Assembly (NCBI GenBank): GCA_044892505.1
Contig: CM097883.1
Location: 373,550,001-373,614,000 of the forward strand
Source: Schmidtea nova
Taxonomy: Eukaryota
DNA: 64,000 bases
Direction of reading: 5' to 3'
In this document: piece after piece, positions 12,401 through 62,269 of the stretch
How the letters are laid out: every line of letters starts with the position of its first letter
Position numbering within the stretch: position 1 is the first letter of the stretch
Notes under the pieces: model-generated
What the model was told of the DNA's origin: nothing
Databases searched by the model: none
Seen by the model: only the letters and a program-made list of their open reading frames with translations
Position numbers and translations under genes: made by a program

Positions 12401-15400
12401 ACTTACAGACCGTTCTCAGTTGAGCCCTGCGCCTCGATTCTCGAAGTGAACGAATCAATGCAGATAGATGTGCAGTTTGTACCAGAACTACCCAAAGATT
12501 TCTCAGATGAACTTATTATTCATTACGAGACGGGTATAAATAACTTTAGTTATTATTATTGTTATTATGTGACAATGAACTTCCAGGAGAAGATGTATAC
12601 ATCCGGATTCATGGATCTGGCCAGGAGATCCCAGTGAGAATAGAACGGTCGCTTGTGCACATTGAGGAGACTTATGTCGGTTTGGCTAATCTAAGGAAGA
12701 TAACCCTCCACAATCGTAGTGATGTGATGATCCATTTCTATTGGAGCAATTTCTCAAGTCAAGTGGCCGAAGATCTAGACCGAGAAACATTTTTGAAGAT
12801 TCTTCAAATAGAAGAGGATGAAGAACAAGAAAGATTTACCTCCGATGAAAATTTGGGATTATTGTCATCCGATAAATTTTCAATTGTTACGCGTAATTAT
12901 ATCAATAAAAAGAAAGTAAGGTATCGCAATTATATGGTCAACTATAATAAATCCATTTAAGATGTTTAAAGAAAAGAAATCAAGATTTGTTGACGATATT
13001 TTTACTATTGATCCGATAGAAGGCGACATTTGGCCTCACACGAGTCTGGACATAACCGTAGCTTTTAAGCCTACAGAAGCCAGAACATACCAATCGTTTG
13101 CATTCTGTGAAGTAACCGGGAGAGAAACCAGATTATCCCTAAAGATAACTGGCGTTGGCATAGGTCCAAAAGTGGAATTCTCATTTAAGACCCTTGATAT
13201 GGGATATATATTTATTCAAGCTCATCATTGCTATGAAATCGTCCTCGTCAACAAAGGCGACATTGATGCGTTATTTAAAATCGAAGGAACAGGATCTCCA
13301 GTTAGTAGATGCTTTATATTCACACCAGATGACGGCCTTATCAGTCCTGGTAGCCACCAAGTCGTTCAAATACAGTTTCAAAGCAAAGAGTTTCTTGGAG
13401 CCTTCCATCAACCTTTCAAGGTGAAAATGGACGGTTGCATGGAACCTTCCATCATAGATTTCAAGTATAAGGATAACAATAGCGATAATAATTAAATACA
13501 TGTAAAATTGCAGGGGAATCGTTATTGGTCCTACGTTTGCGTTCAATGTGCAAAAAATAAAGTTCGGAGAGGTATCTGTTGGATTTCCAAGTTCCAAAGA
13601 GATTACATTGCAAAACACATCACTAGTTCCTTTACATTTTCGGTTGAGAGTGCCAACCGATGGGACAAGTGATCCAATATTGGCTGAGGATTTAACAAAC
13701 AATGTGTCGCCAAGGGAGTATTGTTCTAGGCACCAACCGAGGGAGTTCTCCATAGAGCCTTCAGAAGGTGCATTGGCGTCCATGACGATTTGTAAGATCG
13801 CTGTCGTTATTACAGCAAACAGCATCGGCAAATACCATACCGGATTAGTGCTTGATGTGATCGGAGTAGGAAACGAGTTGTATTCTATTCCAATTACCGC
13901 CAAGTAATTTCCAATCGTAACCTTTATTTAATATTTATTATTCCACCTGTATCTAGTGCAATCGTTCCTAAAGTGGAGTTGTCATGCGACGAATTGGACT
14001 TCAGTCGGTCTTTCCTTCAATATTCCTATGAGAAGGTCATCAAAATGTTCAATTCTTCTAATTTGCCAATCAAATACGAGATCCTCCGACAGACAGAGAA
14101 AACCGAGAACGTGTCATTTTCCAGTTCCTTGAATACGGTTAATTTGTGTATTTAAGTTTATTGAGTCCGCAAAATGGTAGTGCAAATGTTCAGGTATGGA
14201 ATAATACTTCATTTAAATCAAGGGTTCCCGGTTTTGGTTGCAGGGAGGCTTCCAGAGGCTAGTATACAATACTCTTTATAACATTTTGAATGGGTTGCAT
14301 TTATACTATTTATTTACTTCATTGACTGACTATTTTCTTTTTACTCTCTCTATATTAACTTCGCTGATGTTTGTATGTTTGTATGTGCCACGCAAATTTT
14401 GCAAGGTCAAATTAACCCACTTTCCATAATCGGATTGAGCTGAAATTTGGCAAGTATATCCGTTTTCAAGAACACTGTATGCTATTCAAATTTCAGATCG
14501 ATCCGATCACGGAAAGTGGTTATTTCAAAAAAATCAACTATAAAAAAAGTGATTTTACGTAATAATAAATATTTCATAGCATTGAGAACGCATATTAAAA
14601 TTTTAGTTTTGAGTGAAATTAAGAGAATGAAATATAGAGTTTCAAAAACCACGTTTTTTCATTGTTGATTTTTATTTAAAAATAATATTCAAATTCTCTC
14701 GGAACATTTTTATATCAAATTTAATCCAAAAGAATTTTTATATCATCAATAGAATAAACTAAAAAGCGGTTTGAATTTTGATAAAATAATATTGGATACT
14801 AGTAATATTATTTAGATTATATCACTTTTATCTCTTAATTTCACCTTTGATCTTTTCGTTTCTATTTCTGAAATTTTGACTTTTTTATAGACGATGAACA
14901 AATTTTTGGCAAAGTTTTATTTTCAAGTATTAACTCGTAAAAAGGCTGTGCCAGAAATTCGTGTACCTTCTTAAAAAAATTTGTTTGATCTAGTCTTTAT
15001 GAAAAATGAAAATGAAAATTATATTAATTCATATATTTTCATTTTTAAGATAATAGATCAAAATTTTTTCCTATAGAACACAAAATTTCGGCGATGTTTT
15101 CTTCAAAGTGAAATAAACATTTGAAAAGGAAAAAAGCGTTGTTGAAAATTCCTGTTGAATAGAAATGTTTTTGATTTATTGTCTTAACAATGAAAATGTA
15201 AGAAACTGTAAAAAACAACAAAAGAATGACAATTAAAGATGTTAATGATTTTTGTTATTATTTTATCAGTAAAATATAAATTATTAAAATTGTAAAAAAC
15301 AAAAATTATTTTATATATTATTTAATATTTAATTTATAATTAATATATTTAATATATTATTTAAAATTCATAAATTATTTTAAAATTATTTTAAACTTAG

Positions 15401-18400: not shown

Positions 18401-21400
18401 AATTAAAAACAAAACCCACCCGGGCGCTAATGAGGGATAGACAATTTAATTTGTTATTGTTCCAATTAGGCTTAAATATTTCCAGATATTCTAGATAATT
18501 ATCTTCCCGATAATGCTATAAAAGGAGAGCGGGAAAATACGAGCGGCCAGTTAGCCAAAAAGATTCAAGGTAAAATATTGAGTTGAGGAACTTTAAGTGA
18601 GATAAAAAGTGATTACAATAAAATTTTATTCAATTAAACGTACCAGAAAATGCTATTCATTAAATTGGAATTAAAGACAACTTTTAATTTAGTGTGACAT
18701 TCAAATAACAATACAGTAATACCTTGTACAACGCTCTATATGCGTTCCTGGAAATTGAGCGTGATAAAAAACAGCGCTATAGGACGCAAGAAACTGAAAT
18801 TTAGGGGTTACGTTACTTCTGTGTTAAATAAATACCATTTTATTTTTATTTTTTATTATTTTCAATTCATTTTTAATCAATAAATTGAAGTTATATGCAT
18901 TTAATTCAGTTCAATATATACTTCAAAATAAAAATATTCGATACTTTTTCAATAAATAAGTTTTCATTATGTATGTATCAAAAACATATAAAATAATAAC
19001 ATGATGAAATTTAAAACAGAAAAACTAAATTAAATTCTACATATTCCGTAAGAAAAACTGGTCTAATTTAGACTGTTGCCGATTCGATTGTTTCTCTTTT
19101 AAAATTTCAGTGTACGGAGTAAGACTTTTTGAAACACCTCTCTTAATAAAACCAGAGCGTTCAGAATCAGGGTCATTGTCAGTTAGAACATTTAAAGCTT
19201 TGGCAATTATTTCTAAATTTTCTTGTAAAACATTTTTTGTCAATTTCTTTGGCGGCTCTACATTTTCATCATCTTTACTTTCGTGGTTTTGGTATGATTC
19301 GTCTCCCATTTCGATTAAATCTTCATTGGAAACGCCTGCCTCATGTAAATTGATTATCTCTTCTACGTCTTCGTTCATTAGGTCGTCGAACCCCACATCA
19401 TGTGCAATCTGCACTGTTTCCACGATAATGGAGTGTAAATTATCGGGCACAGAATTTTCATTTTCTTTAAGAAGAATTTTATTCCAAACTCCTCGCATGG
19501 AATCATTTGTAACTTCATTCCAGGAGTCTCTAATATTTTCAATCGCCATCATGATATTGAAACATTTTCAAAATTTCAAAATTGTTTCTTTTTGTACATC
19601 AACTGCATGTAAAAGTTGCTTGAATGTACGCCGAAGGTAATAATAGACTTTAAAATAATAGCTTTAAAATTCGCTATAACTTCCTGGTCCATCGGTTGAA
19701 TCAAAGAAGTCGTATTCGGAGGTAAAAAAATAACTTCCACAGGTATGGTTTTTGAAAGCGCAGCTATATTTTTTAAATGCCCAGGTGCACTGTCAATTAT
19801 AAGAAGAGGTCTGGATTCCAGTTTCTTATTCTCGCAATAATCTTTTACTGCGGGCAAAAATATTTCACAAACCATAGCTCAAAAATAGCAGCCGTAACCC
19901 AAGCCTTACGATTGGACATCCAAATGACAGGTAAATTATCCTTGGAGTAACCCTTCATTGCCCGAAGATTTTCCGACTGATGCAGCAACAGATCCTTTAA
20001 TTTTCTCAGCCTTTTGCATAATTGTTCTAACAGTTGATCCGGGTAAATTCAATTCACTGCATACATCTACTTGACGTTTCCCATTATTGATAAGAAATTA
20101 TTTATTTATTTACAACAATAAATAGGAACATTTCAACAAGAAACACTGATTAACTGTTTAATTTTTGTTTCTAAAAAAATTCAAATGAATTATGTGAATC
20201 CCCAAAATATAAACAAAAATGTATGGAAATTTGAAATAAAATACACAGAAATCAATTTTAATGTATATATGTATATGTATTCTTTTTAATGATTTTTTCT
20301 TTTTAATGATTTTTTCATATCAATTTTTTTTGTTTTGAGCTTTATAACGAAACAGCGTTGTAAGAGGGAGCGTTATACGAGGTATTACTGTATTCTGTAT
20401 TAAGTAATTTTGATTTTGATATAAATAAAAGGATACGAGGAGTCAGAATTTGAACCAATCTATTGTTTAAATAAAATAACCCAACAAATTTATTTACTAC
20501 CATTGGCGTAACTATGGGAAGCGAGGGATACGAGCCGCCCTTGGCGAAACTTGCTTGGGCTGCAAATTCGTGATGGGATCGTCTAGTGAGGTTCTTANNN
20601 NNNNNNNNNNNNNNNNNNNNNNNNNNNNNNNNNNNNNNNNNNNNNNNNNNNNNNNNNNNNNNNNNNNNNNNNNNNNNNNNNNNNNNNNNNNNNNNNNNNN
20701 NNNNNNNNNNNNNNNNNNNNNNNNNNNNNNNNNNNNNNNNNNNNNNNNNNNNNNNNNNNNNNNNNNNATACACACTTGATAAAGGCTGTGCCGCAATATC
20801 GTGTATTTAACAACTAAAAATATTTTTATCTATAGTCATACAATTATGAAAATTATTGATTTAAATAAAAATAGAGCCAAAAGATAATTAGAATATTCTA
20901 ATTTAGGCTTTTTGTAATTGATTTCAACAATTTGACATATGTAAAATAAATTTTAATAAATCCCAAATCATTATTTTTATCTTCCAATAGATTTGTTTAT
21001 CTTTTCTCCACTGGCTTCATTATTATTTGAAAATTCCGCATTTCATTTGTAAAATTTCACTTAAAATTTAAAATTCTGAATCTTCGCATTGACGATTAAA
21101 AATTATGATAAAATCCTTAATTTATTTCAATGAATTATGTTATCATAATGAGGCAAATAGTCTTATTTACATCCTTACATTCGTGGTAGGCTAAAAGGTT
21201 CCTGGACTCGCGTAGAAATAATAAAGTTAGTAGGCCTAATAAAGGTCATAGTTTCACAGCATGCGTTAGATGGGTTTGACACCATTGATCAAAGTGTTGT
21301 AGTTTGAGTTAATGTTGCTGTTGGAAAAATCGACCCTCAAGACTCTTAAAACCCAAAAATACACTCAACATCACGCATTATAGATGTGAAGGGCCTGATC

Positions 21401-33200: not shown

Positions 33201-36200
33201 TCATTATATTTGATGTAATTAATTATTAAAATAGATAAAAGAAGAAACGAATATTCAAGCATCAACAACCAAACCAATCCGTCCTAAAAAAAGTGAAGTT
33301 ATAGTCAAAGAAAAGAATTCCAAAGATAGAAAGAGTTCAGGTAAAAAGTCTAATTTATCAAGTTCTATCAGACGAGGATCTCAGTCAGCCACGTCCGCAA
33401 GTAGCATTCCCACTCCGATATCTGATGACGGATTCAAGTTTGTGCTTTCCATCTTTACTAATCCTTCAGTAATGGAATAATAGAATGCAAGTCTATCGGT
33501 GGATCATTCAGCCAGACTCAGAAATTAACCTACGACTGCGATTCAAATCTGACGAATTAGGTCAATTCGACCAATCGTTCAATTTTGAAATTCTCGATAC
33601 CCGTAGAAAGTATCAAGTATTTTGTCGAGGTATTTGTGCCTTCCCGAATATTAGTAAAGAACCAAGAATCGTATTCCCACATCGGAAGAGAAACAGAGAA
33701 AGCAATGAAATAGTTCACAGAAAATATGTTTTAGAAGAGGAAGTTTTTGAGTTTGGGCCACTGCTTATTCAGAAAGATAAACAGAGGTATGTTTTATTGC
33801 ACTGTAATATTGAGTCTAACACATTTCCTTGTATATCTTAGTATACAAATATTATAAATGATGGGTTATTAGTTTCGGTAGGAATTAATTGTGGTTCTGA
33901 CTTCTCGAGTCCTTTAGATAATAACAAAGATCCAACAAATTATAACTTTATTTGACAAATAACAAATTCTCTTAACAACTTCGATACATATTATACTTTC
34001 TTTACACACAAACGTAAAATCACTCCTTCGACAAACTGGTAAATTTGACTGAAATTAGTTTGCTTAAGTACCAAACCCAATCAATGTGAGAAAAGAAGGA
34101 AAACCGACAATCATTTACGTTTGTCATACTAAATCCTCATCTTAAATAAAGCTGCTACGAAGAAATCACCATTTTATACTAAATCTTTATCTTCTAGGTG
34201 TTTCCCTTTTTGACTTTGACAAGTCATTTTCCGGCTTGTCCAATATGACAATTTGCATTTTTCTCCATAATGACTGATGAGATTACTCTGATGAATAATG
34301 AGATTTATTAATTTATATCTTTTCTCTAGTCTCTCTCAGGGACCAACAATTAATTAAAAGTTATTTTATTCGTTTTCAACTTTAAATTTGCCATCGATAT
34401 CCATTTCACCCAAGAACAATATTGATTTTTACCCTTTTAAAATTTTAATTAATAATTAATTTATATTGCACATTTCTCGTTTCTTTTTAATTTTGTGCGC
34501 TTATGTATAACTCCAACATAAATATTATTAGACGGTGATATTAAAAATCAAATTTTAAAATCAAATATTTTCATAATTGTATGACTAAAGATCAATTTTT
34601 TGGTTGTTAAGTACACGATATTTCGGTAGTCTTTATCAAATGTGTATTTCAATCATTATATTAATTCAATCCTAAATAGTAAATTTAATTATTTATTTTA
34701 TATTTTATATATATTTTTAATATTTAATTGGATTAAATTAAATTAATATTTATCCAATAAAATAATTTTTAAAATATAAAAATAAATAATTAAATTTACT
34801 ATTTAGGATCAAGTTAATATAACTATTGAAATACAAACTTGATAAAGGCTGTGCCGAAATATTGTGTACTTAACAACCAAAAGAAATTTCGATCTTTAGT
34901 CATACAATTATAAAAATTATTGATTTAAATAAAAAGAGATCAAAAGTGAAACCAAAAGATAAGTTTAATATTGTAAAAAGTTATTAAAGATAAAGACTTT
35001 CATTAAGAAATTGTTATCTCAAAATTACAGTTAAGTGAATTTGAAAAATCGAATACTTCAAAGTTTACGAGAATAAAAGTGATCAAATATATAGCTAACG
35101 AAATCACTGAAGTTTTGCGTAAAAACGTCTAATATTAAGGAGGATAAAAAATAATCGTGTAAAGAATGGATATGAGGAAATTGTCAACTGAGATACTGAT
35201 CTGATAAGAGTATCACTGGGGTTCAAACAGTGGCGGATTGTACGGTAAGCGGACTAAGTCTAGCCAAAAAAGGCCGATTGTGTTCAATGTTTAAGGTAAA
35301 CATTATTTTATAACATTATTTTATGACTTGTATTCAATTTTATGTCGAATTTTATTTACTAGCATCAGAAACCAAAATGTATCGTCTCTTCACCAAAAGT
35401 AAAAATAGTTTTTTTAGGGCCCCGTTTTTTTACCGCTTAGGGCTCCCATTTTACTTGACCCGCCTCTGGGCTCAGGACAATTATCAGGTTTTTGATAAAT
35501 AAAATATTTAGCCATTACAATATCAATTTCCGTTGTATGTACGCGCCTTACGTAACGTAAGTAACAACTTTATTTATTATTGTAAATAGTATATTATATT
35601 TAATTATATTAGTATTATTAATTATCATTATCTGAGATTGACAAGGATTATTTTATAATCGAAAATTTTCTCACTTAATAAAATTATTTTTGCAGCAAAG
35701 GCTTATTTTGTTACTTATTTATTAATTTATATCATTATTGTTATGATAAAAATGGATAAACTAGACTTAAAATTAATTTCAGTAAAATATTTCATCTTTG
35801 TCACAAATAATTTATCTTCAATTTCAGTTTTCTTTTTTCACTTATGTTTTCCCTATCAATAATATTTGAAATTATAATTTTATATTTAACACTCATTTTC
35901 GATTAATTATTTTTTGACAAATTTAAATTTATTTAAAGTGATAAAAATAAAAAATTTTCATATCGAAAAAATGATGACACATTTTTAATAAAAACACGAA
36001 CTCAATACAAATGAAATATAGTTCATGGGAATTATCCTCATCATAATCTGTGTCACGTGTTGTATATGAAAACAATAATGACGTAATTAATATGATTTAT
36101 TGGGCTAATTAAATAATTTCAATGAAGCAGTTGCTGATTGAAAGTTAATTTTAGGGGATTGGATTTAGTTGTATTACAACTTCAGCAAATGAATTTATAG

Positions 36201-45579: not shown

Positions 45580-48500
45580 GATAAGTAATATAATAACAAT
45601 CAAATTATATAATTACTGTTAAACGTACGCCGAACGATTTGTATTACTTACTCTTTTTAAGTAATTAGTATTATTGTGATTAATAAATTGATTTATGACA
45701 GGTTCATATTGATATGATTGATCCAGACTCAGCATTTTGGATCAGTACAGGTGATCAGAGTGGGTCGGAATCTGGTCCAGTGACTAGTTGATTAATTATT
45801 AATAATTGAAAATGTTTAGTATAAACTAGGTAAACAACCGCATGATTTAGTATTATCAATGGATGTTGGCTCGAGAAAGTCTTTCGATGTCCAATTTAGA
45901 CCCCGTCTTTCCGGAAAATATATTGCGAATATCAAAATTACAGTGGTAAATAATCAGTATGAAGACACAATAATACAGTTGGTAAGAACAGGTGTCATAC
46001 CATATAGTTAATAATGGAAGAAAATATTCTAGATTGGAGAAGGATACGAAGACTTCATTACATTCGAGAACCTTCCAATGATTGAAAACAATATGCTTCC
46101 TATTGCCCCTGCTGCTCCCGTTACACAAAGTGGCACTAAATCAGTTCCTCAGCCACCACCGGAAGAAATCATTGAAGCATGGAAAAATAACATTCTAAAT
46201 TTCGGAGACTGTTTCGTAAATGAACCAAAATCAATTAGCTTTTCAGTAAAGAACCATTCTGAAGAGATCAGTGTACGATTTACATGGCCAAGCATCGACT
46301 CAACAACAAATAATCAAGGAAACGTCATTCCGGTCAAATTCTCTCCCTCAGTTGGTCATCTTCATCCTGGTCAATCTATCTCAGTCATAGCCACTATTCA
46401 ATCGGTATCGCCAAAAGCATGGCAAGAAAAGCCCATTCAATGCAAACTTGTAAGGATCAACATGACCGATCTGGAGTTAGGAGAAAAAGTAAATTTTATA
46501 CATTTCCTTTGGTTTAATTTCAATAATTTGATCCGAGATTAACTATTATTCTTATATTGCAGCCGCTGAACTGGGATGACACGAAGAAGACCATGAAATG
46601 GATTGATGTTCCCGTAGAGAAGTATAAAATAACTAATAAATGTCACGGTTCATTGCGTGCGTAATTAGCTCTCCGACTGCCGGTACTACTCACAAAAAGA
46701 AAGTTATCGAAACAGAACAGGAACCGAAATTCACAGAAGTAACTGAAACTGCTCGATCATTGGACTTGCTTATTACTGCCAATGTCAACTACTGCAAATA
46801 TAAATGCAAGGTTTCCGAGATCAATTTTCAAGACACCATGCTGTTTGAGACACGGATTTATGGGTTGAAAACATTTATGTTGTTTAGATCTACAATTCTT
46901 GACCCTATAATGCAGGATATCTGTGAAAAACGAAGGACAGATCAAGATGAAATATCGATGGAGTATAAAACTAGATAACAGTGAAATATTTACACCGAGA
47001 AGCAGTCGTCCAAACACCGCAAGACAAGACAGGTACGAAACGATTGATGAGGATGATTTGAATAATCCGTTTGTCATCACTCCTTCTGAAGGTGTTATAA
47101 AGGTCAACGAAAAACAAAGATTTGAGGTGGCAACTGATTGGAGATTTCTTTACGATTAATGTCATAAAATAATAAAATAGGTTTCGTTTAATCCTCTAAA
47201 TGTCGACCTTTACAAAGCAAGTATGGTTTGTGAAATTGAAAACCTCGATCCAACTTCCAATAAGCCTAGTATCTCTCTCTCGGGTCGTTCTTTGCAGCCT
47301 TATTGTCATTTTGAATTAACCGACTCAGATTACCTGGTAAGTGGCCGACGAGATCCGACTATGCGAGGTCCAGGAGGATCTCCGCCAGGAAATGGAATTA
47401 ATCCGAACACCAGAGTTATAGAAATTAATGTTATTGGATTAACCTCCAGAGATATTAAGTAAGAACATGTATATAAATGAAGTATAATATTGTTGACATT
47501 TATCGTTTTCCCAGACAATTTAATGTGGTCAACCCAACGAGAAATGATTTCGAATATCGCTGGATATGTGAGGATTCAGACCTACCTAAGAATAAGAAAT
47601 TGATACAATGTTTGGCCACGAATGGAATAATTGAAGCTGGGAAAAAATTTCAAGTATGATAAATATTAATTTTGTTTTCATATTTCATGGAAATAACTAA
47701 CTTCTCGCTGCCTAATGCCAAATAATGAAGCATTAAAAATTTACTTAATAATTTGTCAGTAAAATATATAATATTTAATAAATTAATTTGAGAACGAATC
47801 TTATACTTATAATAATAATAAATAAACTATAAAATAAAAATTATAATTTATTCAAATAAGTAAAAGAACATCAATTTCTAAAATATATTTTTGCAATATA
47901 TTTCGACAGCTCAGCTGTCATCAGGCTCTAAACAAATTCAATAAAATAAAAAATGATCTTATTCATACGTTTATTAGTGATTACATAAAATAAAACCACA
48001 ATTATAATAAAATTTATTAAAACTCTCCAAATGCACTTGGATATTGCATTTTGTATATTTATTTTAGGATTAAATGATTTCATCATCAAAGCCTCGCAAT
48101 GCACACGTTCATAATAATTTTTTAAATCCTTAGACAATATTTTAAAATTGTAAATATAAATGGTTTTCTTGCATGTATTATTATGCTCAATAATATTACT
48201 ATTTCCGCTCTTTCTGGCATGTCCTTGAACTCGTGTTATATCCAATGTATGCAACATTACACACATTACAAGTAAAACGATATACTAGATCAGAAAATAG
48301 AGAGGTTAATGTCGCAGATTTATTATTGAACATGTCTCAAACTTTACAAAACTTAGAAATTATTTTAACATTAGAATTAATATTTTTTAAAATAGATTTC
48401 TTAAAAATTATTAATTTCTAACAAAATAATTCCGATGAATTAATTATTGAATTAGTATTGAAAAACCTTCGACATAGGTGAGAAAGTTCTCGTCCTCTTA

Positions 48501-51500: not shown

Positions 51501-54500
51501 TTTTTCCTACTATATATATATATATATATATATAGATTTGTGCAATATTTCTATATTTTGTACACCTTTCACATGTGTTCTTTCATGCTCTTTCCTTTAA
51601 TTCCTTTAAACGGTTTTGAAATACTCTTAAATATTTTTCTTCATATTTTAGACCATACATCAATATTTGTTGTGTTTTGTTTTGATAATAATTAATAGGG
51701 CGACTAGAATAATTTCACATTACAAGGACTTTCTTTTGTTGACTTTTAATATTTTCAGTGCGGATTTCAATTCACTTCCCAATCAGTCGGAGTGACGGAA
51801 TCATTCTGGAGATTTGAAATACCGGAAATGGGAATAAACGTACCTTTTCTCGTTGTCGGACAGTGCACGGAACCGAATGTTACTTTCGATAAATCCCATT
51901 TTAAATTCCCGGCTCTTCTCATTGGTCATGAATCGGTTGAAACTGTTGAAATCATCAATTTTGACAACCAATCCTACAATTTTGCATTCCAAGAAATTAG
52001 TCGTCATGCACCAGGTCACAGCAACAGTTTAAAAATTGAACCGATGCATGGAATTATTCCGAGTTGTGGGAAAGTCTCAGTCTACATTGGATTTACTGCA
52101 ACCTTTAACCAGACTCTTAATTTTAACTTAACGTGTCAAGTTGATAAAAAAACGTATCCTTTATCTATTAATGTCAAAGCAGAAGGCTATTCAGTGGATA
52201 GCACAGTTTGGTTTGAGGATGCCAACGGTCACAGTGTCGAGTTGATCCCATGCCCAAAGAACAGTGATCAGGAAGTGTATAATAACATCAATATAGGTCG
52301 AATGGAAGTCGGTGAGCAACAAACGAGATGGATAACATTAGTGAATGACGGGAAATTCAATTACGATTTCAACTGGGATATAAAATGGAAAGACGATCCA
52401 AAACTAAGCAGCATGCTGCTTTTGACGCCAATTTCAGGCACTGTAATTATAGGAGAAAAGCAAAGATGTGACCTTCACATAATTGCAAACAGACCAACAA
52501 TCTTACAAAAGGTTGTCGCTCTCCTAACAATTGGATATGGCAATAGCTACCTTTTGAACATCACTGCAGATATCCATCGGCCGATTTTGGAATTCTCATT
52601 TTCTCGACACGATTTTGGGCACTGCTTCGTTTATCGAGCAGGCATGAAACAGCTGACGGCGGAACTAGTCATAACGAATCGAGACTCGAAGGATTCGAAT
52701 CAAAAACCCATTAGTGTTGAATGTCTAACTGAATCAAATGACGTTTTCATGCATAATTTCGAGGCTGCTGTCATCATTCCTGGCTCATCAACGACTATTA
52801 AGATCACTTTCCTGCCACGAAAACCGAAAAAATATCAACAGCTTCTTTTGTTTGAAGTTAATGGTATCTCAAGACATTCGGTTGAGTTGACTGGATACTG
52901 TGAGGAATTGAAACTCGAGGCGGTTGATATACCAAATCATACTGTCAATCTCGGAATGTTAAAAGTAGGAGAAAAAGTAAACAAAATAGTCACTATTATC
53001 AATACGACGCACGTCCCCGTGACATCAAAATTAGTATTTTCGCCGACATGTGAAGAACTTCAACAACGAGGAGTTTTCAAAATTACTCCTTTAGGTATGA
53101 TACTGATATATAATTTACAATGTTCTATCAGGGACTTTCATTCATTTTTGTAACATTGACATTTAATAGTGTTAATTTCTAATTTAATAGTATTTTTTAA
53201 TTTTATTACTAATTATCTTTTAATGATCTATAATATAGTCTGAAAAAATGACAAATAATTAATTAATTTATAATCAAGTTTTAATCAATATTTATATTGA
53301 ATATTCAATAATCGGTAAAATATAAAATTTGTATAATCCAAATTCATTTTATATTATAAAAATAAAATACTATTAAATGTCAACATTAATACAATTATTA
53401 TTTTATAAAAATTTGTTTATCAGCTGAAATGATTAATAAAATATTTTCCAGATAGAGTATTTTTAACACCTCTCAACAAAGCTCTACCTCAAATTGTCTT
53501 TCCATTTTGTCGTTCCACTACCACAAACTTTTGCTTTTCGAAAAATATAGTTTATAAACTCATCTGTCTAAAATGTGATACAGAGCTTTCCGCATTCGAC
53601 TTAATAAATACATTAAAAGTAGAACCAGTAATTATCACGAATATTGAGAGTAGGTGCATAAGATGGTCCCATTTAGTAAAGAAACAAAATATCAAGTTTT
53701 ACAAGGCAGATCTAAAAATTCCTTATAAATATTAGCTTCCGAAACTTCCTTCGTTAAAGTTACAATCTCTTCATAATTCATAACAAATTAACAAATTAAA
53801 ATATATATTTTTAAAACAGTGCCCACTTGATAGTATTTAAACAAGGTTAATTATTGAACATCACTCTCCTCCTCTTCATTTTCTTTGAATCTCTTCAGCC
53901 ATTCAATTCTTCTTGATTTGATTGAGTTTGGAAATTGTAATTCAACTTGTCTTGGTGATAAGAATTTTAAAATTTTGTAAGGTCCTTCATATTGGATTCC
54001 CTCTTTCTTTCGTCTATGTGGTTCCAAGCGAACTAACACTTTCTCTCCCACCGTGAAAACTCGAGTACCTCGGTGTTCTAAATCTCTATTTTGCATTGTT
54101 GTAGCTGCTTTCTCTAGATTAGTTTTTGTTTTATCCACGATTTCTTCTTTGTTTTTTTGTATATGTCCTAATCTAGAATATAAATTAATCTTCCGACCAT
54201 ATACAATTTCAAAAGGTGAGAAATTTGTTGAGTTTTGTATTGTAGCATTCAAACTAAATTCAATCTTCGGTAACAATCTGCACCAATTATTTTCTGTTCT
54301 AATCTCTGTCAATGATGTTGCCAACATGTCCCGAACTGTTCTTATGATGCGTTCTGCTAAACCATTTGATTGATGTTGATATGGTGAACTGAATTCTTGT
54401 TTTATACCAAATTTCTCCATCCAATCACGAAACATTGATCCTTCAAAAATTCTTCCTCTATCTGTAAGAATGCTTTCTGGTCTACCAAAACGATATATCC

Positions 54501-57500
54501 AATTATTTAAAATGACATTCAAAATTGTTGATTCATCCTGCGTGCTTGTTGCTGATAAGCTGTCTCCATATATGCAATATCCACTACTATCTGTTCTAAA
54601 AACCGTTCTCCTGTTCTTGGCAATATAATTTCATTTGTTCTTCCTTGATCAATCTTTCTAGTAGCACAAATGTTGCATTTATTAATACATTCCGTAATAC
54701 TTTGATTCATCGATGGCCAAAAGAAAAAGTCTTTTTAATAAAATAAGGTTTTCTTGATACCCAAATGACACAGTTCAATATGAAAATAATTTACCAATGT
54801 TTTTACGTACTTGTCAGGTACTACAATTGCAAGTTTTCCATCTGCATTAGTCATCAATACGTCATCTTGTATCTGTAATATTTTTAGATACTTGAATATA
54901 CTGCTACTGATTGTTTCATAAGATATATGAGCCTCATTTCCATTAAGATGTGATATGATTTCTGAAATAATTTTGTCTTCGTTTTGCTTCTGTTTAATAA
55001 TTTTCATAATATTTGAACTTCCTTGTAGACTATTAATGTACCGAGTTCTACATTTTGACTCTTCAGCATCCTTGTGTTTCATCTGACAATGAGCGCATAT
55101 GGCATTATTTAAACGAGACATACCATCTGCATTTCCATGTTCTTCTCCCTTCCTATATTTTAACTCAAAATCGTATTCAGATAAATATGCCATCCATTTC
55201 TGAAACTGCGGACTTATTGGTTTCTTTGTCGTGTTCATAAACGTCAATGCCTTGTGATCCGCTCTAGCTACACATTTTCTTCCATATAAATATTGCTTGA
55301 AATGTACAATCAACTCGCGAAGTGCCAACAACTCTTTTCTAGTAACACAATATCCCATTTCATGTGTTGTCAAATGTCTTGAACCATACGCTATTACTCC
55401 CTCAGTACCATCTTCCTTAATTTGAGATAAAACGTCACCTATAGCTCCAAAACTAGCATCCGTATCAAGAATAAATAGTCGATCTGCCCTTGGAAATTCT
55501 AATATTGGTGCTTCACACAAGAGTTTCTTTAAATTGATAAAACTTTTTCTACATTCTTCAGTCCAAACAATAATTTTATCTTTTCCTGTTGTTGCGGCAT
55601 ACAAAGGTGCTGCTATCATTGAATAATCTTTGATAAACCGCCGATAATAATTAGTTAAACTTAAGAATGACCTCAATTCTGTAACACTCTTCGGTTCAGT
55701 TGCATTTTCAATTTATGAAATCTTTCTTTTGTTTGTTTGAATTCCCTTTTCACTCACTGTATGACCAATGAAATTTAATACGCTTTTATGGAACGCGCAT
55801 TTTTCGGGATTAACTTTCAAACCGGCATCTCTAATGCGTGTGAATACTTCAAATAGAAGTTTATTATGAGTTTCCTGATTTTCAGTATATATTAAAATGT
55901 CATCAAGATAGACAACCACTCCTTTGAAAATTAATCCTTCCAATATCTTATGCATCAGTTTCTGAAAAGTGGCAGGAGCTGTTGATAAACCAAATGGTAA
56001 CCTGTTAAAACAGAATTGTCCCTCTTTTGTACTAAATGCCGTCTTGGTTTGGGAATTTCCATGCAACTCTACCTGATAATAGGCTTGACCTAAATCAATT
56101 GATGAAAATATCTTTGACTTATCGAGACAATCCAATAATAACTGCATGTCTGGCATCGGGAACGAAAACCTTTCTGTAACTGAATTTAATAGCCTAAAAT
56201 CTAGACACATTCTTATAGAGCTATCCGTTTTTCCAACTATTACTAGTGGTGTGTTCCACGGACTCTGACATTTTCTCACAACTCCAACTTCTAATAAATT
56301 CTGTATTAACTCTTCAATTTTGACTTCTAAATGCATGGGTTGTCTTCTTGGATTTTGTAAAATTGGAGGACCCGAAGTCGTTATTCCACGTGTTATTACT
56401 TTTGTATGACCTAAGTCAAATCTGGATGCCATAAAAATGTTGCTAAACTTAGATATTAAAGTACCCAACTTCGAATTTTTGTCCAACTTGAGTGTCAATA
56501 ACGCAAACTCTAAACGATCAGAATCTGTAAATCTCTGGGTAATTAACGATGCATCTATATTATTGACTTCTTTAAGCTCCATGCCAAATATTCTCATGGT
56601 GTCTACACCTCCTATAAAATCTGGATGAATTTTTCTGACAATAATAACATTCAATTCTCGACATTTGTTGTTCCATTTTGCAACGATTTTAACGCTTCCA
56701 AGAGGTTTCTCGTCTTCTTTTGAAAAAACTCCACTCAACCGTATTCTGCTTTCCATCAAATTTGGACTGCCAATTAATCTCCAACATTTCTCACTCATTA
56801 CACTGACTGAAGCTCCTGAATCCCATAGCATCTCTACATAAAATTCATTTATTTCAATAGTACTCCACTTTCTGTCATCATCCTTCTTAAACATCACATC
56901 CTTCTTTACAACATTTCGTTTTTTATACTCATCTACTGTCTCGACCCTACTGACGAAATGTAGACAACAGGGTCTTCTTGGTTTTCTTTTTGAGTCTCAA
57001 CATTATGTATGACTGGGGCTATCAATTCCTCTGATCTGTCATCGTCTTCGTGTATACAGTACACTCTTGGTTCCAGTCTTTGTGTATTGCTTCTTGATTT
57101 CACTAACAAATTGCAATTTCTAAATGAATGACCTTCTTTACCGCATATTAAGCATTTGTCCTTCAAAGGACACTCAAATCGCATATGGTCACTTTGTCCA
57201 CAACAAAAGCATTGACCAGATCTTAACCTTTCTTCTGCTGGCTCAGGTAGACCACAACATCTATTATAAACTTTTCTTGCGATATGTTTCATTGAAACTA
57301 ACGGTGGTGGTCTACGATCCATAGTTGTCCTCTCATTATATTGTTCTACCACGGGTTTCACTCTATCAATTTTTCTTTCGCTTCTTTCATTTCTATTTTG
57401 ATAACTTATTTCTGGTTGACGACTCGAATACATTCTATTATTTAAAGATGTTTTTTTAGTCCATTTCTTCTGTTTATCTTGAGCAACGTTTGCATAGGTT

Positions 57501-60350
57501 GATTTCACTACTGCCTGAACTTCTTCAAATCGTTCTTTTGCATCGTAGCCTTCTCGTGCCTCATATACTTTTGCTAAATTTCTAATTTCTTCCCTCGTGA
57601 TATTAGCCTTCGTTGAAATATTTTCTATCAAACGGTCGCTCCGAACTCTGCTGCACAAAATCATTTCAACAATATTTTCTTTTGAAATTCAACAGTCAAA
57701 AACTTTGTCAACAAGTTTCTTTACTCGTATCTCGAATGTAATAAATCTTTCATCGTTATTTTGTTTCACTGCTGATAAGTCACAAATCTTATCCATAATG
57801 GACTTCTTTTTGGTAAATGTTTCATTAAACCATTCACTAGCTTTTTCATTCGTTGTGGCGATGTCCTTAAATTCTTTCCAGAGAATAGATGCCTCTTCAG
57901 ACAATAATAAATCAAAAATACTTACTAAATTTAGATCATTTAGTAGCATCCAATCTTCAATATCCTTGAGCCATTTCTCTACTTCTACCGTGCTTCGGCC
58001 GTCGAATCTTCTGACATTAAAATTCAAAATGTCTTTTGCCTGTTTAGACAAAGATTCCATTATCATCTTTCTATGCTGATTTCTTGTCACCGCGTGAATC
58101 GGCTCGATATTTTCGGCGTGGTCGCCAGTTACAATCTCTTCATAATTCATAACAAATTAACAAATTAAATATATATTTTGTAAACAGTGCCCACTTGATA
58201 ATATTTAAACAAGGTTAATTATTGAACATCACTGCTAAAAAACACAATACGACCATCAACATTCATTTCGCATAAAATCATGTTAAATTATAAATAAAAT
58301 TTTCATCCAGTAAAATTAATTTAAAATAAATAAATCATAAATTTAATATTTAAAATTAAGTAAAATATAAGGCATACTTGAAAAAATCCGTGTAAAATAT
58401 TCGTGTGCTAAATACACTAATTTTGATCAATAAACTTTATAGAAAAAAATGTAAATTTCTTAAATAGAAAAAAAGAAACCAAGGGTGAAAAAGATAAACG
58501 AGATCAATGATATTACATCATTATGTAATTGAAAGTAATGATAAAATTAATTAAAGAGGTTCTCATTTGATAGACTGATCATCGCACTAGATAGTGTTAA
58601 TATTTCATTTATTAGTGTTTTCTGGTAAATATGATAATTTATTTATAATTAATTTTTAGGNNNNNNNNNNNNNNNNNNNNNNNNNNNNNNNNNNNNNNNN
58701 NNNNNNNNNNNNNNNNNNNNNNNNNNNNNNNNNNNNNNNNNNNNNNNNNNNNNNNNNNNNNNNNNNNNNNNNNNNNNNNNNNNNNNNNNNNNNNNNNNNN
58801 NNNNNNNNNNNNNNNNNNNNNATAGATAAAAAATTTTTTTTTTATAAACAATAACACAATATTTCGGCACAGCCTTTATCAAGTGTGTAAATACACACTT
58901 GATAAAGGCTGTGCCGAAATATTGTGTTATTGTTTATAAAAAAAAAATTTTTATCTATAGTCATTATGAGAATTATTGATAATAATAATAAAAAAAGATC
59001 AAAGGTGAAAAAAGATAATTATGATAATATATATATATATATATATTCCTTGTTCTGTGTCGTTTGGTCACTTACAATTTTATTTTCTATTAAATTTCAT
59101 CTAAAATATAATTATAAATAAATTATCACAATTGCTAAATACACCAATAAATGAAATACTAACATTATTAAATGCAAAGGTCATACTATCAAATGAGTAA
59201 CTTTATATTAACAATTTATTTAAAATTGACAGTAACCAATTATATATAATTCATACACTCGTTGTGCTATTATTTATTCTCCATTTGCTAAATAATTATT
59301 GTTTCATTATTCACCATACCCACACAACCCCTTCCAAAAACTATTTCGTCCTATATTGTCCTTCCTGGGAAATGATCAGTCTATATTATAGGAATATTGC
59401 TGTATTTTCCTGTTGTAAAACCCTCCAAACTGACTCAGATCTTTTGTTTTCATTTCTGAACTCAGGCTTGGAATAAAAATAAATTCAATTTACATCGCGA
59501 ACTGCGCATCATATATCAAAGTATAAAAGATAATAATTTATAATGATTATACTACTATGAAACGCAAAACAATAATTCGTCGTCTCCCTGACTGCTGTAT
59601 GACGTGAACATTTACATTCAGGTCAGGAATTGGTAATTAATCCAGGCAAGGCCAATGGTGTTCCCATTCAAATAGCATTTTCTCCAAACAGAAGAATCTC
59701 AAAGTTTAATGAGGAAGTATATTGTGAGGCAGTTGGGGTAACATTCCCTATTTTCATGATGACTGGAGGATGCCAGGCTCACGACATTCGCTTTGATGTT
59801 GAATCAATTTCGTTTGGACTGGTTACCAAAGGCAGTCACATTACAAAGAAGTTATCAATGACAAACTACGGCGATATTGGAGCCAGGTAAGATTTTCAGA
59901 AACTTTTAGACATTTATTGAATTCTTATAGATTTAAATGGAATAGTGACTCATTCAAACCTGATTTCTCCATAACCCCTGTCTCTGGATACATTTCTCAA
60001 GGGATGGAAGTGGTTTTTGAAATTTGCTTTTCTCCAGTTAGACCAGCTCCGGATGTTCGATATGACGTAATAATTATATTACTTATTATTATTATTATTT
60101 GTAAAAGATATCGCTGAACTCTAAAACTGATTTACTTATTACAATTACTAATAGTTATAATTCAACATTATTAAAGAATGTTGAAATATAATTACAGAAT
60201 AATACTACATTCCATCTAGGTCAGTGTTTCCCAACCTGGGCGATTTGAAATGTTAGGTGCGCGATGATTGTTGTTTTGCATATGTCAACTTTTTTTACCA
60301 CTGTTTTTATTTTTTCCGTATCGTTCTAAATTCTAGAATCTAGATACAAT

Positions 60351-60428
<78 letters not shown>

Positions 60429-62269
60429 CGCAGACAAACACAAACAAGTCTTATAAATGACCTACGTCTATATATACCTCTGCCCTTAATTTGTCAATCT
60501 TTATAGTATAACAATATATGATGCACACACATCACCTTACATGTAGTTGCATCTACTCTACCCTAGTGCTTCGCAACCTGGGCGATATCGCACACTAGTG
60601 GGCGATTTGAATTTTTAGCAATTGGAAATGGGCGATAATCGTAAAAGGGTTGGGAAACGCTGATATAGGCGATAAACAAAATTAGTATTTCTAGTTTAGC
60701 GTACTGGATAACGGTGCATTAGTTTCCTTGTTCAAATACTTAGTTCTCAAGAGTGGGTAGTCTGTGTATCGTTCGGAATTCTTTTAACTTTGTTGTAATT
60801 CATCTGAATCATTTTTATTCTTTTATCTCTCAATGGATAAGTCCGCCGATTTGCTACCGATTCAGTCTGGAAGGACCATAATATTTAGAGACATTAATTT
60901 GCCCATTCTCTCTCTTGATCATAACTATGTCTCCAATCTCAACTTTCTATGAATTATTCCTTTATCATAATGCTGTTTCTGAACAGCATTCTTGCTTTTA
61001 CTGTTTCCTAATACAAATTTCTGAATTCCTTCTGTTCATTTTCCTGTTGTGTTCTGAATTGTGAATCGGATTCCCAATTTCAATAATAGACAAAATGTCA
61101 TCCCAATCGTGTTTCCTTCAGAACGCTAGAAATTACAGCTTTTGTTGATCAGCATATTACATTGTTGATAAAGCTGATGTAAAAATTATGTTTAGTATGA
61201 ATTATAAACATCAATGGAAATTATTTAGCAATTTATATGTTTGTTATCGAAATAAACGTAAGCTACCATGTTGCACTAGAACAGACAAAGCCCCGTACAG
61301 CGCGTATCTTCCCAAACTCTTGACATACCCTCAGGATTACACATACCACATCCACAAATAATCTGCANNNNNNNNNNNNNNNNNNNNNNNNNNNNNNNNN
61401 NNNNNNNNNNNNNNNNNNNNNNNNNNNNNNNNNNNNNNNNNNNNNNNNNNNNNNNNNNNNNNNNNNNNNNNNNNNNNNNNNNNNNNNNNNNNNNNNNNNN
61501 NNNNNNNNNNNNNNNNNNNNNNNNNNNNNNNNNNNNNNNNNNNNNNNNNNNNNNNNNNNNNNNNNNNNNNNNNNNNNNNNNNNNNNNNNNNNNNNNNNNN
61601 NNNNNNNNNNNNNNNNNNNNNNNNNNNNNNNNNNNNNNNNNNNNNNNNNNNNNNNNNNNNNNNNNNNNNNNNNNNNNNNNCAGTCGTATCGATGTTTGTG
61701 AATATGTGAGTGTGAGAGTTTTGAGTCCGTGTGTTTGCCTCATTTTTTGCGGTTTAAGTAAATTAACTGATGTGGTTGTTGATGGTGTTTATTTTCTTCT
61801 TTTGATTTGTGTTCTATACTCGTTTAATTTTTCAAATGTCATGGGCGTAATGCCACATACTTTGGACAAGACTGATCGTCTTTTCTGTACTCGAGTTTTA
61901 GAGCATTTTCAATTGGGGATTATGGATTTCGTTTTCAATCATTCTGTTGTTTATAAATATGGAAATATTTATAATATATTCTTAAAAAAATATTTTTTAA
62001 AATAAAAATAAAAGATTATTATATTTTTAAGATTAATTTATTTAAATTAAAAAATTTTAATCGATTTAAATTTTTTGCTATAATATATAATTTAAAATAT
62101 ATATTTTATTTTAAAAATTAATACTAATTTGTTTGAAAAAATCGATTTATTTGATTTAGATTTGAATGTAAGATTGGGTAGCACCTGATGAAGAGAATTA
62201 AGTTCTCGAAATATATTGTGCAAAATATATATTTGGATTGGCGTTTGTTTTTAATTTTTATTATTATTA

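What the first reader, a model, noticed from the sequence alone, without database searches (positions are those of the whole stretch)
58854..58927. Head-to-head pair of hammerhead-like motifs with a compensatory U3-A8 core pair at the apex of a foldback element
Seen: ACAC-UUGAUAA-A-GGC(UGU)GCC-GAAA-UA-UU-GUGU on the + strand, and its exact mirror on the - strand 8 nt away. The core differs from canonical CUGANGA at exactly positions 3 and 8. Established: C3 and G8 form a Watson-Crick pair in the active hammerhead, so U3/A8 is the compensatory double change, and minimal hammerheads with a short palindromic stem III are known from Penelope-like elements and can cleave as dimers. Inference: this AT-rich repeat family encodes a variant self-cleaving RNA that a plain CUGANGA pattern search would miss. 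The arrangement offers a ribozyme on either strand.
Basis: partly seen in the sequence, partly recalled or inferred. Interest (0 to 1): 0.82.

Follow-up and report, generated by a model that had tools for sequence, protein, structure and literature searches.

The report
Palindromic retroelement junction with hammerhead-like motif
Two copies of a short mobile-element repeat sit head to head in an intron of a cilia gene, and each carries a sequence that loosely fits an already published "minimal hammerhead" self-cutting RNA of Penelope-like retroelements, so this is a marginal, probably weak or dead, example of a known kind and not a new ribozyme.

Summary
The hammerhead-like string lies at 58895-58927 (+), with its exact mirror at 58854-58886 (-). 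Both sit at the centre of a 137-bp near-perfect palindrome that starts at the edge of an N gap.

The palindrome is a head-to-head pair of units of a ~140-nt interspersed repeat (family A, at least 10 units in the window). Its anatomy is that of Penelope-like element (PLE) insertions: an adjacent inverted copy, a ~40-nt tail on one arm only, and a 12-bp target duplication in one copy.

PLEs are present here. A second family (H) has a canonical CUGAUGA minimal hammerhead just 3' of a GIY-YIG endonuclease remnant. That motif recurs 3' of homologous ORFs in eight foreign contigs, with strong covariation.

Support is marginal: 18-19 bits against a model of family H (E about 0.02-0.03), no Rfam hit, a 3-bp helix II, and no compensatory change. 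U3 is invariant while position 8 drifts. An RNA spanning both arms folds into a -92.6 kcal/mol hairpin instead.

Verdict: partly supported, a new member of a known kind, low to moderate interest.

The parts
58895..58927 (+). Hammerhead-like motif of the right (direct) arm: helix I ACAC/GUGU, core UUGAUAA, unpaired A, helix II GGC/GCC with UGU loop, GAAA, palindromic AUAU, U17. Predicted cleavage after 58923.
   Evidence: Scores 18.0 bits, E 0.034, against the PLE min-HHR model R2. Isolated fold -6.5 kcal/mol, z -0.86.
58854..58886 (-). Identical hammerhead-like motif of the left (inverted) arm.
   Evidence: Scores 18.9 bits, E 0.02, with R2.
58822..58890 (-). Inverted family-A unit (5' part only). 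It is cut off by the N gap.
   Evidence: nhmmer profile positions 7-72.
58891..59026 (+). Direct family-A unit, complete to its 3' tail.
   Evidence: nhmmer profile positions 3-136.
58661..58821 (.). N gap that interrupts the left arm. Not filled and not inferred.
59027..59047 (.). (TA)n microsatellite directly abutting the 3' end of the direct unit.
   Evidence: family D1
58547..58659 (.). Left arm of an older, imperfect outer inverted repeat (family B) in whose centre the family-A palindrome sits.
   Evidence: (I2, I19). 79% identity to 59101-59211.
59101..59211 (.). Right arm of the outer inverted repeat (family B). Other family-B copies are at 29383-29671 and 38957-39232.
58370..58502 (+). 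Old, diverged solo family-A unit 300 nt to the left, with its motif decayed.
34553..34973 (.). Second family-A head-to-head pair: arm 34553-34651 (-) and arm 34827-34973 (+). The arms continue inward as a further inverted repeat. The arms are 82-86% identical and only the right arm carries the ~40-nt tail.
20768..20897 (+). Family-A unit whose contig starts at the unit's 5' end immediately after N gap 20598-20767. Its motif has GCAA in place of GAAA.
14819..15214 (.). Cluster of four old family-A units forming two head-to-head junctions, at about 14930 and about 15112, at the same unit position as in the finding.

Best explanation
The palindrome is the junction of two head-to-head copies of a short (~135-145 nt), AT-rich, non-coding interspersed repeat (family A). 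The repeat was inserted by the machinery of Penelope-like retroelements (PLEs). It lies in an intron of a HYDIN-like gene, inside an older foldback repeat.

How the palindrome most likely formed (inferred): the PLE enzyme nicks and extends both DNA strands. Two cDNAs of the same short RNA are therefore made in opposite orientation and joined at the RNA's 5' end. This gives a palindrome that is perfect at birth, with the 3' ends pointing outward and a ~40-nt tail on one side only.

The hammerhead-like string is a consensus feature of the first ~38 nt of the unit. It is most likely a diverged relative of the PLE minimal hammerhead, in its published U3-A8 form. It is probably weak or inactive.

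In any RNA that crosses the apex, the antisense arm pairs with the motif in a 68-bp hairpin, so the ribozyme fold cannot form. Only single-arm transcripts, as dimers and perhaps with protein help, could cleave.

Shown: the anatomy, the repeat family, the presence of PLEs and of genuine PLE hammerheads in this window, and the marginal model score. Inferred: PLE dependence of family A, the two-strand priming origin, and the ancestry of the motif.
For: Family and anatomy:
- nhmmer finds 13 family-A arm segments.
- Head-to-head junctions at the same unit position occur at 58890, at about 14930 and at about 15112. At 34651/34827 the arms run further inward. The contig at 20768 begins at that same position right after a gap.
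- In two of the three complete pairs one arm is 40-53 nt longer at its 3' end.
- The copy at 15460-15594 is flanked by a 12-bp direct repeat.
- The unit in the finding ends at a (TA)n tract.

These features match published PLE features:
- Adjacent inverted 5'-truncated copies, a 30-40 bp tail at one end, trouble for shotgun assemblies, and (TA)n targets in one clade (PMC8557442).
- Cleavage and extension of both strands, and a tail that lies between two reverse-transcription start sites (PMC11167929).

PLEs are in this window:
- ORF 47931-48266 (-) has 16 relatives. One of them has RVT_1 with the match at its C-terminus, and three have GIY-YIG.
- The ORF just upstream has two cysteines between its GIY and YIG motifs, which is the PLE hallmark.
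- A canonical minimal hammerhead lies just 3' of it. It recurs 3' of the homologous ORF in 8 foreign contigs. In that alignment 94.9% of cells are paired, 8 of 10 pairs have double-sided changes, and 0 of 500 shuffles reach the score.

- It shares with that family the 4-bp helix I, the unpaired nucleotide after A9, G10.1-C11.1 and a palindromic helix III.
- It is the best non-family hit of the family model over the whole window: 18.9 and 18.0 bits, E 0.02-0.03.
- The U3-A8 core is documented for PLE hammerheads.
- The first 38 nt are 92-95% identical among the three best copies, against 72-77% for the rest of the unit.
Against: - No family-A unit is joined to a PLE ORF, and its 3' tail is unlike that of family H, so PLE dependence is circumstantial.
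- The model E-value is rough (a factor of about 5 either way). With a model built from window copies only, it was 0.28-0.52.
- Helix II has 3 bp, against 4-6 bp in the relatives found here and 6-8 bp in the literature.
- No Rfam hit.
- No compensatory change in any helix, and position 8 drifts alone.
- All 8 aligned PLE hammerheads (3 from this window, 5 from foreign contigs) keep C3-G8, and so do the three further foreign motifs.
- C3-to-U and G8-to-A are both GC-to-AT transitions, the expected direction of neutral decay in a 30% GC genome. Two random hits among the four G/C core positions fall on the 3/8 pair one time in six.
- The perfect mirror arm ends at a gap, so part of the palindrome could be an assembly product.
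Confidence: 0.5

Rival explanations
1. Chance resemblance. Family A is an ordinary foldback or MITE-like repeat with no ribozyme ancestry, and the hammerhead-like string is a coincidence in an AT-rich consensus.
For: The descriptor was written after seeing the sequence. It is expected 0.03-0.09 times per 64 kb in shuffles, and another unrelated U3-A8 hit exists at 35634-35672. There is no Rfam hit, no covariation, and the isolated fold is not better than shuffles, z -0.86. The model hit is borderline, and background hits reach 16-16.6 bits.
Against: The motif matches four features that were not needed to find it and that are typical of PLE minimal hammerheads. It is the top non-family hit of a model built from real PLE hammerheads of this genome and its relatives. 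It is the best-conserved part of the unit in the youngest copies. The insertion anatomy is PLE-like rather than MITE-like: an asymmetric tail and a 12-bp duplication.
Confidence: 0.3
2. One reading: family A encodes an active variant hammerhead (U3-A8) that self-cleaves, as a dimer, on either strand.
For: The architecture fits the PLE minimal hammerhead, and the U3-A8 variant is documented. The C3-G8 pair is established, and a swapped pair partly restores activity in a PLE hammerhead. The motif is intact in the youngest copies, and the arms here are identical, so the family was active recently.
Against: Even canonical PLE minimal hammerheads cleave poorly in vitro and need dimers, an extended helix III or protein. 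Here helix II has 3 bp and the intermolecular helix III would be four A-U pairs. Cofolding predicts no such helix. In this locus the antisense arm competes with the ribozyme fold, -92.6 against -6.5 kcal/mol. No covariation. The copy at 20768 has A13C and the copy at 34647 has lost helix II.
Confidence: 0.15
3. The mirror arm is an assembly or library artefact: a fold-back chimera at a contig end next to a gap. Only one arm would then exist. This question is independent of the others.
For: The arms are identical over 61 nt, and the left arm is only 68 nt long and ends at the gap. The single difference is a homopolymer length, a typical read error.
Against: Of the 18 contig ends at gaps in the window, only this one is palindromic, so there is no general assembler signature. 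Older, diverged head-to-head pairs of the same family, with the junction at the same unit position, are real. Another gap ends exactly at that position. PLE inverted insertions are known to break shotgun assemblies.
Confidence: 0.2
4. The hairpin is a small-RNA precursor (miRNA or hairpin-RNA locus).
For: A perfect 68-bp RNA hairpin inside an intron of a transcribed gene. Rfam miRNA models match at E 1e-8 to 1e-11.
Against: All miRNA matches are below the gathering scores (58 against 80, 54 against 84, 45 against 51). They occur on both strands alike, as expected for any long perfect hairpin. There is no sequence match to a mature miRNA, and the element is a multi-copy repeat.
Confidence: 0.05

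Closest known systems
PLE minimal hammerhead (min-HHR), including the U3-A8 core variant of Schistosoma mansoni Cercyon elements (Cervera and de la Pena 2014, PMC4209133)
   Same: Helix I of 4 bp without a defined loop. Unpaired nucleotide between A9 and 10.1. G10.1-C11.1. GAAA. Palindromic 15.2-16.2, so that helix III can form only between two copies. U3-A8 in place of C3-G8. Occurrence as two motifs close together on opposite strands. Widespread solo copies away from any ORF.
   Different: Helix II has 3 bp with a 3-nt loop, instead of 6-8 bp (4-6 bp in the relatives found here). The two motifs are 8 nt apart instead of 100-700 bp. There are no consensus subfamilies with compensatory changes in the sample available. 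No link to a PLE ORF was shown.
Family H of this window: canonical PLE min-HHR 3' of a GIY-YIG endonuclease remnant (62177-62227, 10923-10973, 10512-10562, 47885-47934)
   Same: Same order of parts and several of the same letters: xCAC before the core, U at position 7, one unpaired nucleotide after A9, G...C closing helix II, GAAAUA...UU, then GUGx. Both also occur as head-to-head inverted pairs.
   Different: Family H has C3-G8, helix II of 5-6 bp and a six-nucleotide palindrome AUAUAU. It has strong cross-sample covariation and sits next to a PLE ORF. The flanks of families A and H are not alignable. The family-H model scores family A at only 18-19 bits, against 60-64 bits for the intact family-H copies.
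PLE insertion architecture (Craig et al. 2021, PMC8557442; PMC11167929)
   Same: [quoted passage not shown]
   Different: The unit is about 140 nt and non-coding, and a recurrent 5' end replaces random 5' truncation. This suggests a short non-autonomous RNA rather than a truncated autonomous element.
Canonical type I hammerheads of animal satellites and retrozymes (Rfam Hammerhead_1)
   Same: Type I topology, a short palindromic helix III and dimer-dependent activity.
   Different: No loop-loop tertiary contacts, helix I of 4 bp rather than 6, not in direct tandem arrays, and no Rfam score.
Foldback elements and MITEs
   Same: Short, AT-rich, multi-copy, long inverted arms, hairpin-forming.
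   Different: The arms are asymmetric (a tail on one side), the junction is at a fixed internal position, and one copy has a 12-bp target duplication. No terminal motif or fixed duplication length was seen.

Membership tests
Hammerhead ribozyme (Rfam clan: Hammerhead_1, _3, _II, HH9, HH10) | Score at or above the curated gathering threshold of a hammerhead covariance model | tested here: not met
   No hammerhead hit at gathering over the whole window. None at E <= 10 on 1.8 kb or on 61 nt. The genuine PLE hammerhead at 62177-62227 also gets no hit, so these models are blind to this subtype.
Hammerhead ribozyme | Conserved core C3 U4 G5 A6 N7 G8 A9 ... G12 A13 A14 ... A15.1-U16.1, H17 | tested here: not met
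   All positions fit except U3 and A8. There is also an extra A between A9 and 10.1.
Hammerhead ribozyme | Site-specific self-cleavage | not testable with these tools
   Needs in vitro transcription. The predicted site is after 58923.
PLE minimal hammerhead (min-HHR) | Short helix I (4-5 bp) | tested here: met
   ACAC/GUGU, 4 bp. Paired in 75% of cells across the family.
PLE minimal hammerhead (min-HHR) | Unpaired nucleotide between A9 and 10.1, and a G10.1-C11.1 pair | tested here: met
   A at 58906, G58907 paired with C58915. The criteria come from PMC4209133.
PLE minimal hammerhead (min-HHR) | Palindromic 15.2-16.2 / loop 3, allowing a dimeric helix III | tested here: met
   A15.1-U-A-U16.1 reads AUAU. 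However, cofolding predicts no such intermolecular helix.
PLE minimal hammerhead (min-HHR) | Long helix II (6-8 bp in the literature, 4-6 bp in the relatives found here) | tested here: not met
   GGC/GCC, 3 bp with a UGU loop. Relatives.
PLE minimal hammerhead (min-HHR) | Consensus families with covariation and compensatory changes | tested here: not met
   0 pairs with double-sided change. Covariation score 0.086, below the shuffled mean of 0.161. Only 10 arms were available, all from one window.
PLE minimal hammerhead (min-HHR) | Significant match to a model of verified family members | tested here: inconclusive
   R2, built from 8 PLE hammerheads of this window and of foreign contigs: 18.9 and 18.0 bits, E 0.02 and 0.034 over 64 kb, the best non-family hit. 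R1, built from window copies only: E 0.28 and 0.52. The calibration is rough.
PLE minimal hammerhead (min-HHR) | Location in the pLTR or 3' region of a PLE, or in truncated PLE copies | tested here: inconclusive
   The insertion anatomy is PLE-like, but no family-A unit adjoins a PLE ORF in the window. Four collection scans for more copies found none.
Penelope-like element insertion | Adjacent inverted copy at the 5' end, and an optional 30-40 bp tail at one end | tested here: met
   Four head-to-head junctions, and arm-length differences of 40 and 53 profile positions. The criteria come from PMC8557442 and PMC11167929.
Penelope-like element insertion | RT plus GIY-YIG endonuclease ORF | tested here: not met
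   None in or next to family A. It is present as a remnant next to family H at 47931-48333 (-).
MITE / foldback DNA transposon | Terminal inverted repeats reaching both ends, and a target duplication of fixed length | tested here: not met
   The arms are asymmetric. The only significant duplication is 12 bp in one copy. The 7-bp matches elsewhere are at chance level for AT-rich DNA.
microRNA precursor (MIR6274, mir-3688, mir-31, mir-875) | Score at or above the gathering threshold | tested here: not met
   58/80, 54/84, 45/51 and 33/84 bits, on both strands alike.

The most novel reading that the evidence does not exclude
Family A is a short non-autonomous parasite of Penelope-like elements. 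It carries a working U3-A8 minimal hammerhead with an unusually small 3-bp helix II at the very 5' end of its RNA. The head-to-head palindromes made on insertion switch the ribozyme off by hairpin formation. That would be a natural on/off arrangement, and a natural activity test of the 3-8 pair swap.
Probability: 0.1. Interest if true: 0.5.

Novelty: new member of a known kind. Interest (0 to 1): 0.3.

Why it matters
If the motif cleaves, it would be a natural example of the U3-A8 core with the smallest helix II reported for this class. It would also tie a ~140-nt non-coding repeat to the PLE life cycle, which is still poorly understood.

As the evidence stands, the value is mostly practical:
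- It shows how PLE-type inverted insertions create perfect palindromes that break assemblies. Two of the nine gaps in this window end at such junctions.
- It shows that a hammerhead-like string at such a junction should be judged against the PLE minimal-hammerhead literature before being called new.
- The by-product is more solid than the finding itself: a well-supported PLE hammerhead family that Rfam models miss.

Tried and rejected
- Rfam at gathering and at E <= 10 gave only sub-threshold miRNA-type hairpin hits, and none for any hammerhead.
- I looked for more family copies in public collections with two metagenome scans, one genome scan and one viral scan. All found 0, so covariation could be tested only on the copies in the window.
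- Pfam and the word search on the endonuclease-like ORFs found nothing. Only the full HMMER search and Pfam on its hits identified them.
- I suspected that ORF 61706-62002, next to the family-H copy at 62181, was also an endonuclease remnant. BLASTP against ORF 47931-48266 found nothing, so that claim is dropped.
- Contig-end palindromes as a general assembler artefact: only this one of 18 contig ends is palindromic.
- 7-bp 'target duplications' around other copies were rejected as chance in AT-rich DNA. Only the 12-bp one is kept.
- Homodimer cofolding predicts swapped helices I and II and no extended helix III.
- The organism could not be named. HYDIN-like exon relatives are about 70% identical and come from unnamed metagenome and read-assembly contigs. 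Nothing suggests human DNA: 30% GC, with PLEs present.
- The gap was not filled or inferred.
Full report
**What is in the sequence**

The window is AT-rich (about 30% GC) and eukaryotic, with nine N gaps.
- A large HYDIN-like gene runs along the + strand.
- A Ty3/gypsy element lies on the - strand at about 53758-58233.
- The finding sits in the intron between the exons at 51792-53153 and about 59630-59887.

- The two motifs are the inner ends of a palindrome with arms 58829-58889 and 58892-58952 (100% complementary, 2-nt centre).
- The palindrome runs out to 58822/58958 with one homopolymer-length difference.
- The left arm stops at the N gap 58661-58821.

**What it belongs to**

The arms are units of an interspersed repeat of about 140 nt, which I call family A. 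A profile of the arms finds 13 segments in the window.

- Recurrent head-to-head pairs. Besides the finding, head-to-head junctions at the same unit position occur at about 14930 and about 15112. These are old, with diverged arms. At 34651/34827 the arms continue inward as a further inverted repeat and are 82-86% identical. The contig that follows gap 20598-20767 begins at exactly that unit position.
- Asymmetric arms. In two of the three complete pairs, one arm carries 40-53 extra nucleotides at its outer (3') end.
- Target duplication. The short copy at 15460-15594 is flanked by a 12-bp direct repeat.
- Setting. The unit in the finding ends at a (TA)n tract. The whole palindrome sits in the centre of an older imperfect inverted repeat, family B (58547-58659 / 59101-59211), which has copies at 29383-29671 and 38957-39232.

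**Why I read this as Penelope-like element (PLE) handiwork**

Published PLE insertions have the same traits:
- An inverted 5'-truncated copy immediately adjacent, and a 30-40 bp tail present at one end only. They are known to break shotgun assemblies, and one clade prefers (TA)n (PMC8557442).
- A purified PLE protein nicks and extends both DNA strands. The tail corresponds to the stretch between two reverse-transcription start sites (PMC11167929).

Two cDNAs of one short RNA, primed from both strands and joined at the RNA's 5' end, would give what is seen here: a palindrome that is perfect at birth, a junction at a fixed unit position, outward-facing 3' ends, and a tail on one side. This mechanism is inferred, not shown.

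PLEs are demonstrably present in the window:
- ORF 47931-48266 (-) had no Pfam or word-search hit. The full HMMER search found 16 relatives.
- Among those relatives, one has RVT_1 with the match at its C-terminus, and three have GIY-YIG.
- The ORF just upstream has two cysteines between its GIY and YIG motifs. This is the diagnostic feature of PLE endonucleases.

**A genuine PLE hammerhead family found on the way**

My relaxed descriptor also hit a canonical core at 62181-62221. It belongs to a second repeat family, which I call H.
- Copies lie at 10923-10973, 10512-10562, 47885-47934, 39782-39832 and 29163-29212, plus a truncated one at 28884-28941.
- The copy at 47885-47934 lies just 3' of the endonuclease remnant.
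- The same motif lies 3' of the homologous ORF in eight foreign contigs: L002, L003, L004, L005, L007, L008, L009 and L011.
- On an alignment of eight sequences, 94.9% of cells pair and 8 of 10 pairs show double-sided changes. No shuffle in 500 reaches the covariation score (0.771 against 0.243), and C3-G8 is invariant.
- Its architecture is the published PLE minimal hammerhead: a 4-bp helix I, one unpaired nucleotide after A9, G10.1-C11.1, a helix II of 4-6 bp, and a palindromic helix III (PMC4209133).
- Rfam does not detect it.
- Family H also forms head-to-head pairs: 10483-10998, where each arm starts inside the endonuclease coding region, and 28853-29242.

In favour:
- It has the 4-bp helix I, the unpaired A after A9, G10.1-C11.1 and a palindromic AUAU.
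- The U3-A8 core was already reported for PLE hammerheads of Schistosoma mansoni, as were motif pairs on opposite strands.
- A covariance model built from the eight family-H sequences ranks the two arms as the best non-family hits in the whole window: 18.9 and 18.0 bits, E 0.02 and 0.034 with a rough calibration.
- The first 38 nt of the unit are 92-95% identical among the three best copies, against 72-77% for the rest (p 0.005-0.05).

Against:
- A model built from window copies alone gave E 0.28-0.52. Background hits reach 16-16.6 bits.
- Helix II has only 3 bp.
- The isolated motif folds no better than shuffles: -6.5 kcal/mol, z -0.86.
- Across 10 arms there is not one compensatory change.
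- The copy at 20768 has lost A13, and the copy at 34647 has lost helix II.
- All 8 aligned PLE hammerheads keep C3-G8, as do the three further foreign motifs.
- Relative to them, U3 and A8 are two GC-to-AT transitions in a 30% GC genome. They can be read as a compensated pair or as ordinary decay. Two random hits among the four G/C core positions land on the 3/8 pair one time in six.
- The post-hoc descriptor is expected 0.03 (U3-A8) to 0.09 (any Watson-Crick 3-8 pair) times per window by chance.

**How it would work, if at all**

- Canonical PLE minimal hammerheads are poor catalysts in vitro. They need dimers, an extended helix III or the PLE protein.
- Here the intermolecular helix III would be four A-U pairs, and cofolding does not predict it.
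- Any transcript that crosses the apex, for example the HYDIN-like pre-mRNA, contains the motif and its perfect antisense. It folds into a 68-bp hairpin of -92.6 kcal/mol.
- The head-to-head arrangement therefore works against ribozyme folding rather than offering a ribozyme on either strand. Only single-arm transcripts could fold the motif.

**Artefact question**

The perfect arm next to a gap invites suspicion. Three observations argue the other way:
- Only this one of 18 gap-flanking contig ends is palindromic.
- Diverged pairs of the same family share the junction position.
- Another gap ends at that same position.

I put about 0.2 on the mirror arm being an assembly product. This question is independent of the ribozyme question.

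**Verdict**

The motif is plausibly a diverged member of the already described PLE minimal-hammerhead class, in a PLE-type inverted insertion. Activity is unshown and unlikely to be strong, the claimed compensatory event is not visible in the family, and neither the U3-A8 variant nor the opposite-strand pairing is new.
- Novelty: a new member of a known kind.
- Interest: 0.3.

Noticed in passing
window 62177-62227 (+), 10923-10973 (+), 10512-10562 (-), 47885-47934 (-), 39782-39832 (+), 29163-29212 (+), 28884-28941 (-): A separate repeat family (H) carries a canonical-core PLE minimal hammerhead: CUGAUGA, one unpaired nucleotide, helix II of 5-6 bp, GAAA, palindromic AUAUAU. Three copies are intact and the others are decayed or truncated. 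The motif recurs 3' of homologous PLE ORFs in eight foreign contigs with strong covariation. Rfam misses it.
   Followed up: yes
window 47931-48333 (-): [quoted passage not shown] Relatives carry RVT_1 and GIY-YIG. A family-H hammerhead follows the stop codon.
   Followed up: yes
window 10483-10998: A ~515-bp foldback made of two head-to-head 5'-truncated PLE 3' ends. Each arm starts inside the endonuclease coding region and carries an outward-facing family-H hammerhead about 30 nt from its end.
   Followed up: partly
window 28853-29242: A short inverted family-H fragment, broken inside helix II, is joined head to head to a longer direct copy. This is the published PLE arrangement of an inverted truncated copy followed by a direct copy.
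   Followed up: partly
window 20598-20767 (gap) and 20768: The contig after this N gap begins exactly at the 5' end of a family-A unit, the position of the palindrome centre in the finding. This suggests that the gap hides another head-to-head junction. The gap was not filled or inferred.
   Followed up: partly
window 29383-29671, 38957-39232, 58547-58659 with 59101-59211: Family B is a ~290-bp foldback repeat with ~100-nt arms about 79% alike. Two copies lie within 150-500 nt of family-H copies. Its relation to families A and H is unresolved.
   Followed up: partly
window 15448-15459 and 15595-15606: A 12-bp direct repeat flanks a 135-nt family-A copy that has an inverted 5' part. This looks like a target-site duplication of a retro-insertion.
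   Followed up: partly
window 36005-36054 (-), 35634-35672 (+) and 21109-21157 (-): Further weak matches to the PLE hammerhead model (16.6, 12.5 and 16.0 bits). The first looks like a decayed copy with G5 changed. The second is an unrelated U3-A8 descriptor hit.
   Followed up: no
window 53758-58233 (-): A Ty3/gypsy-type LTR retrotransposon with gag, protease, RVT_1 and integrase ORFs and ~108-bp terminal direct repeats, inserted in the same intron.
   Followed up: partly
window 39262-39470: Another unrelated long palindrome (foldback or MITE-like), seen while reading the sequence.
   Followed up: no
window 19037-19875 (-) and 4509-5959 (-): ORFs that look by eye like a pogo/Tigger-type DDE transposase fragment and a divergent tubulin-like pseudogene. 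Neither was tested against any library.
   Followed up: no
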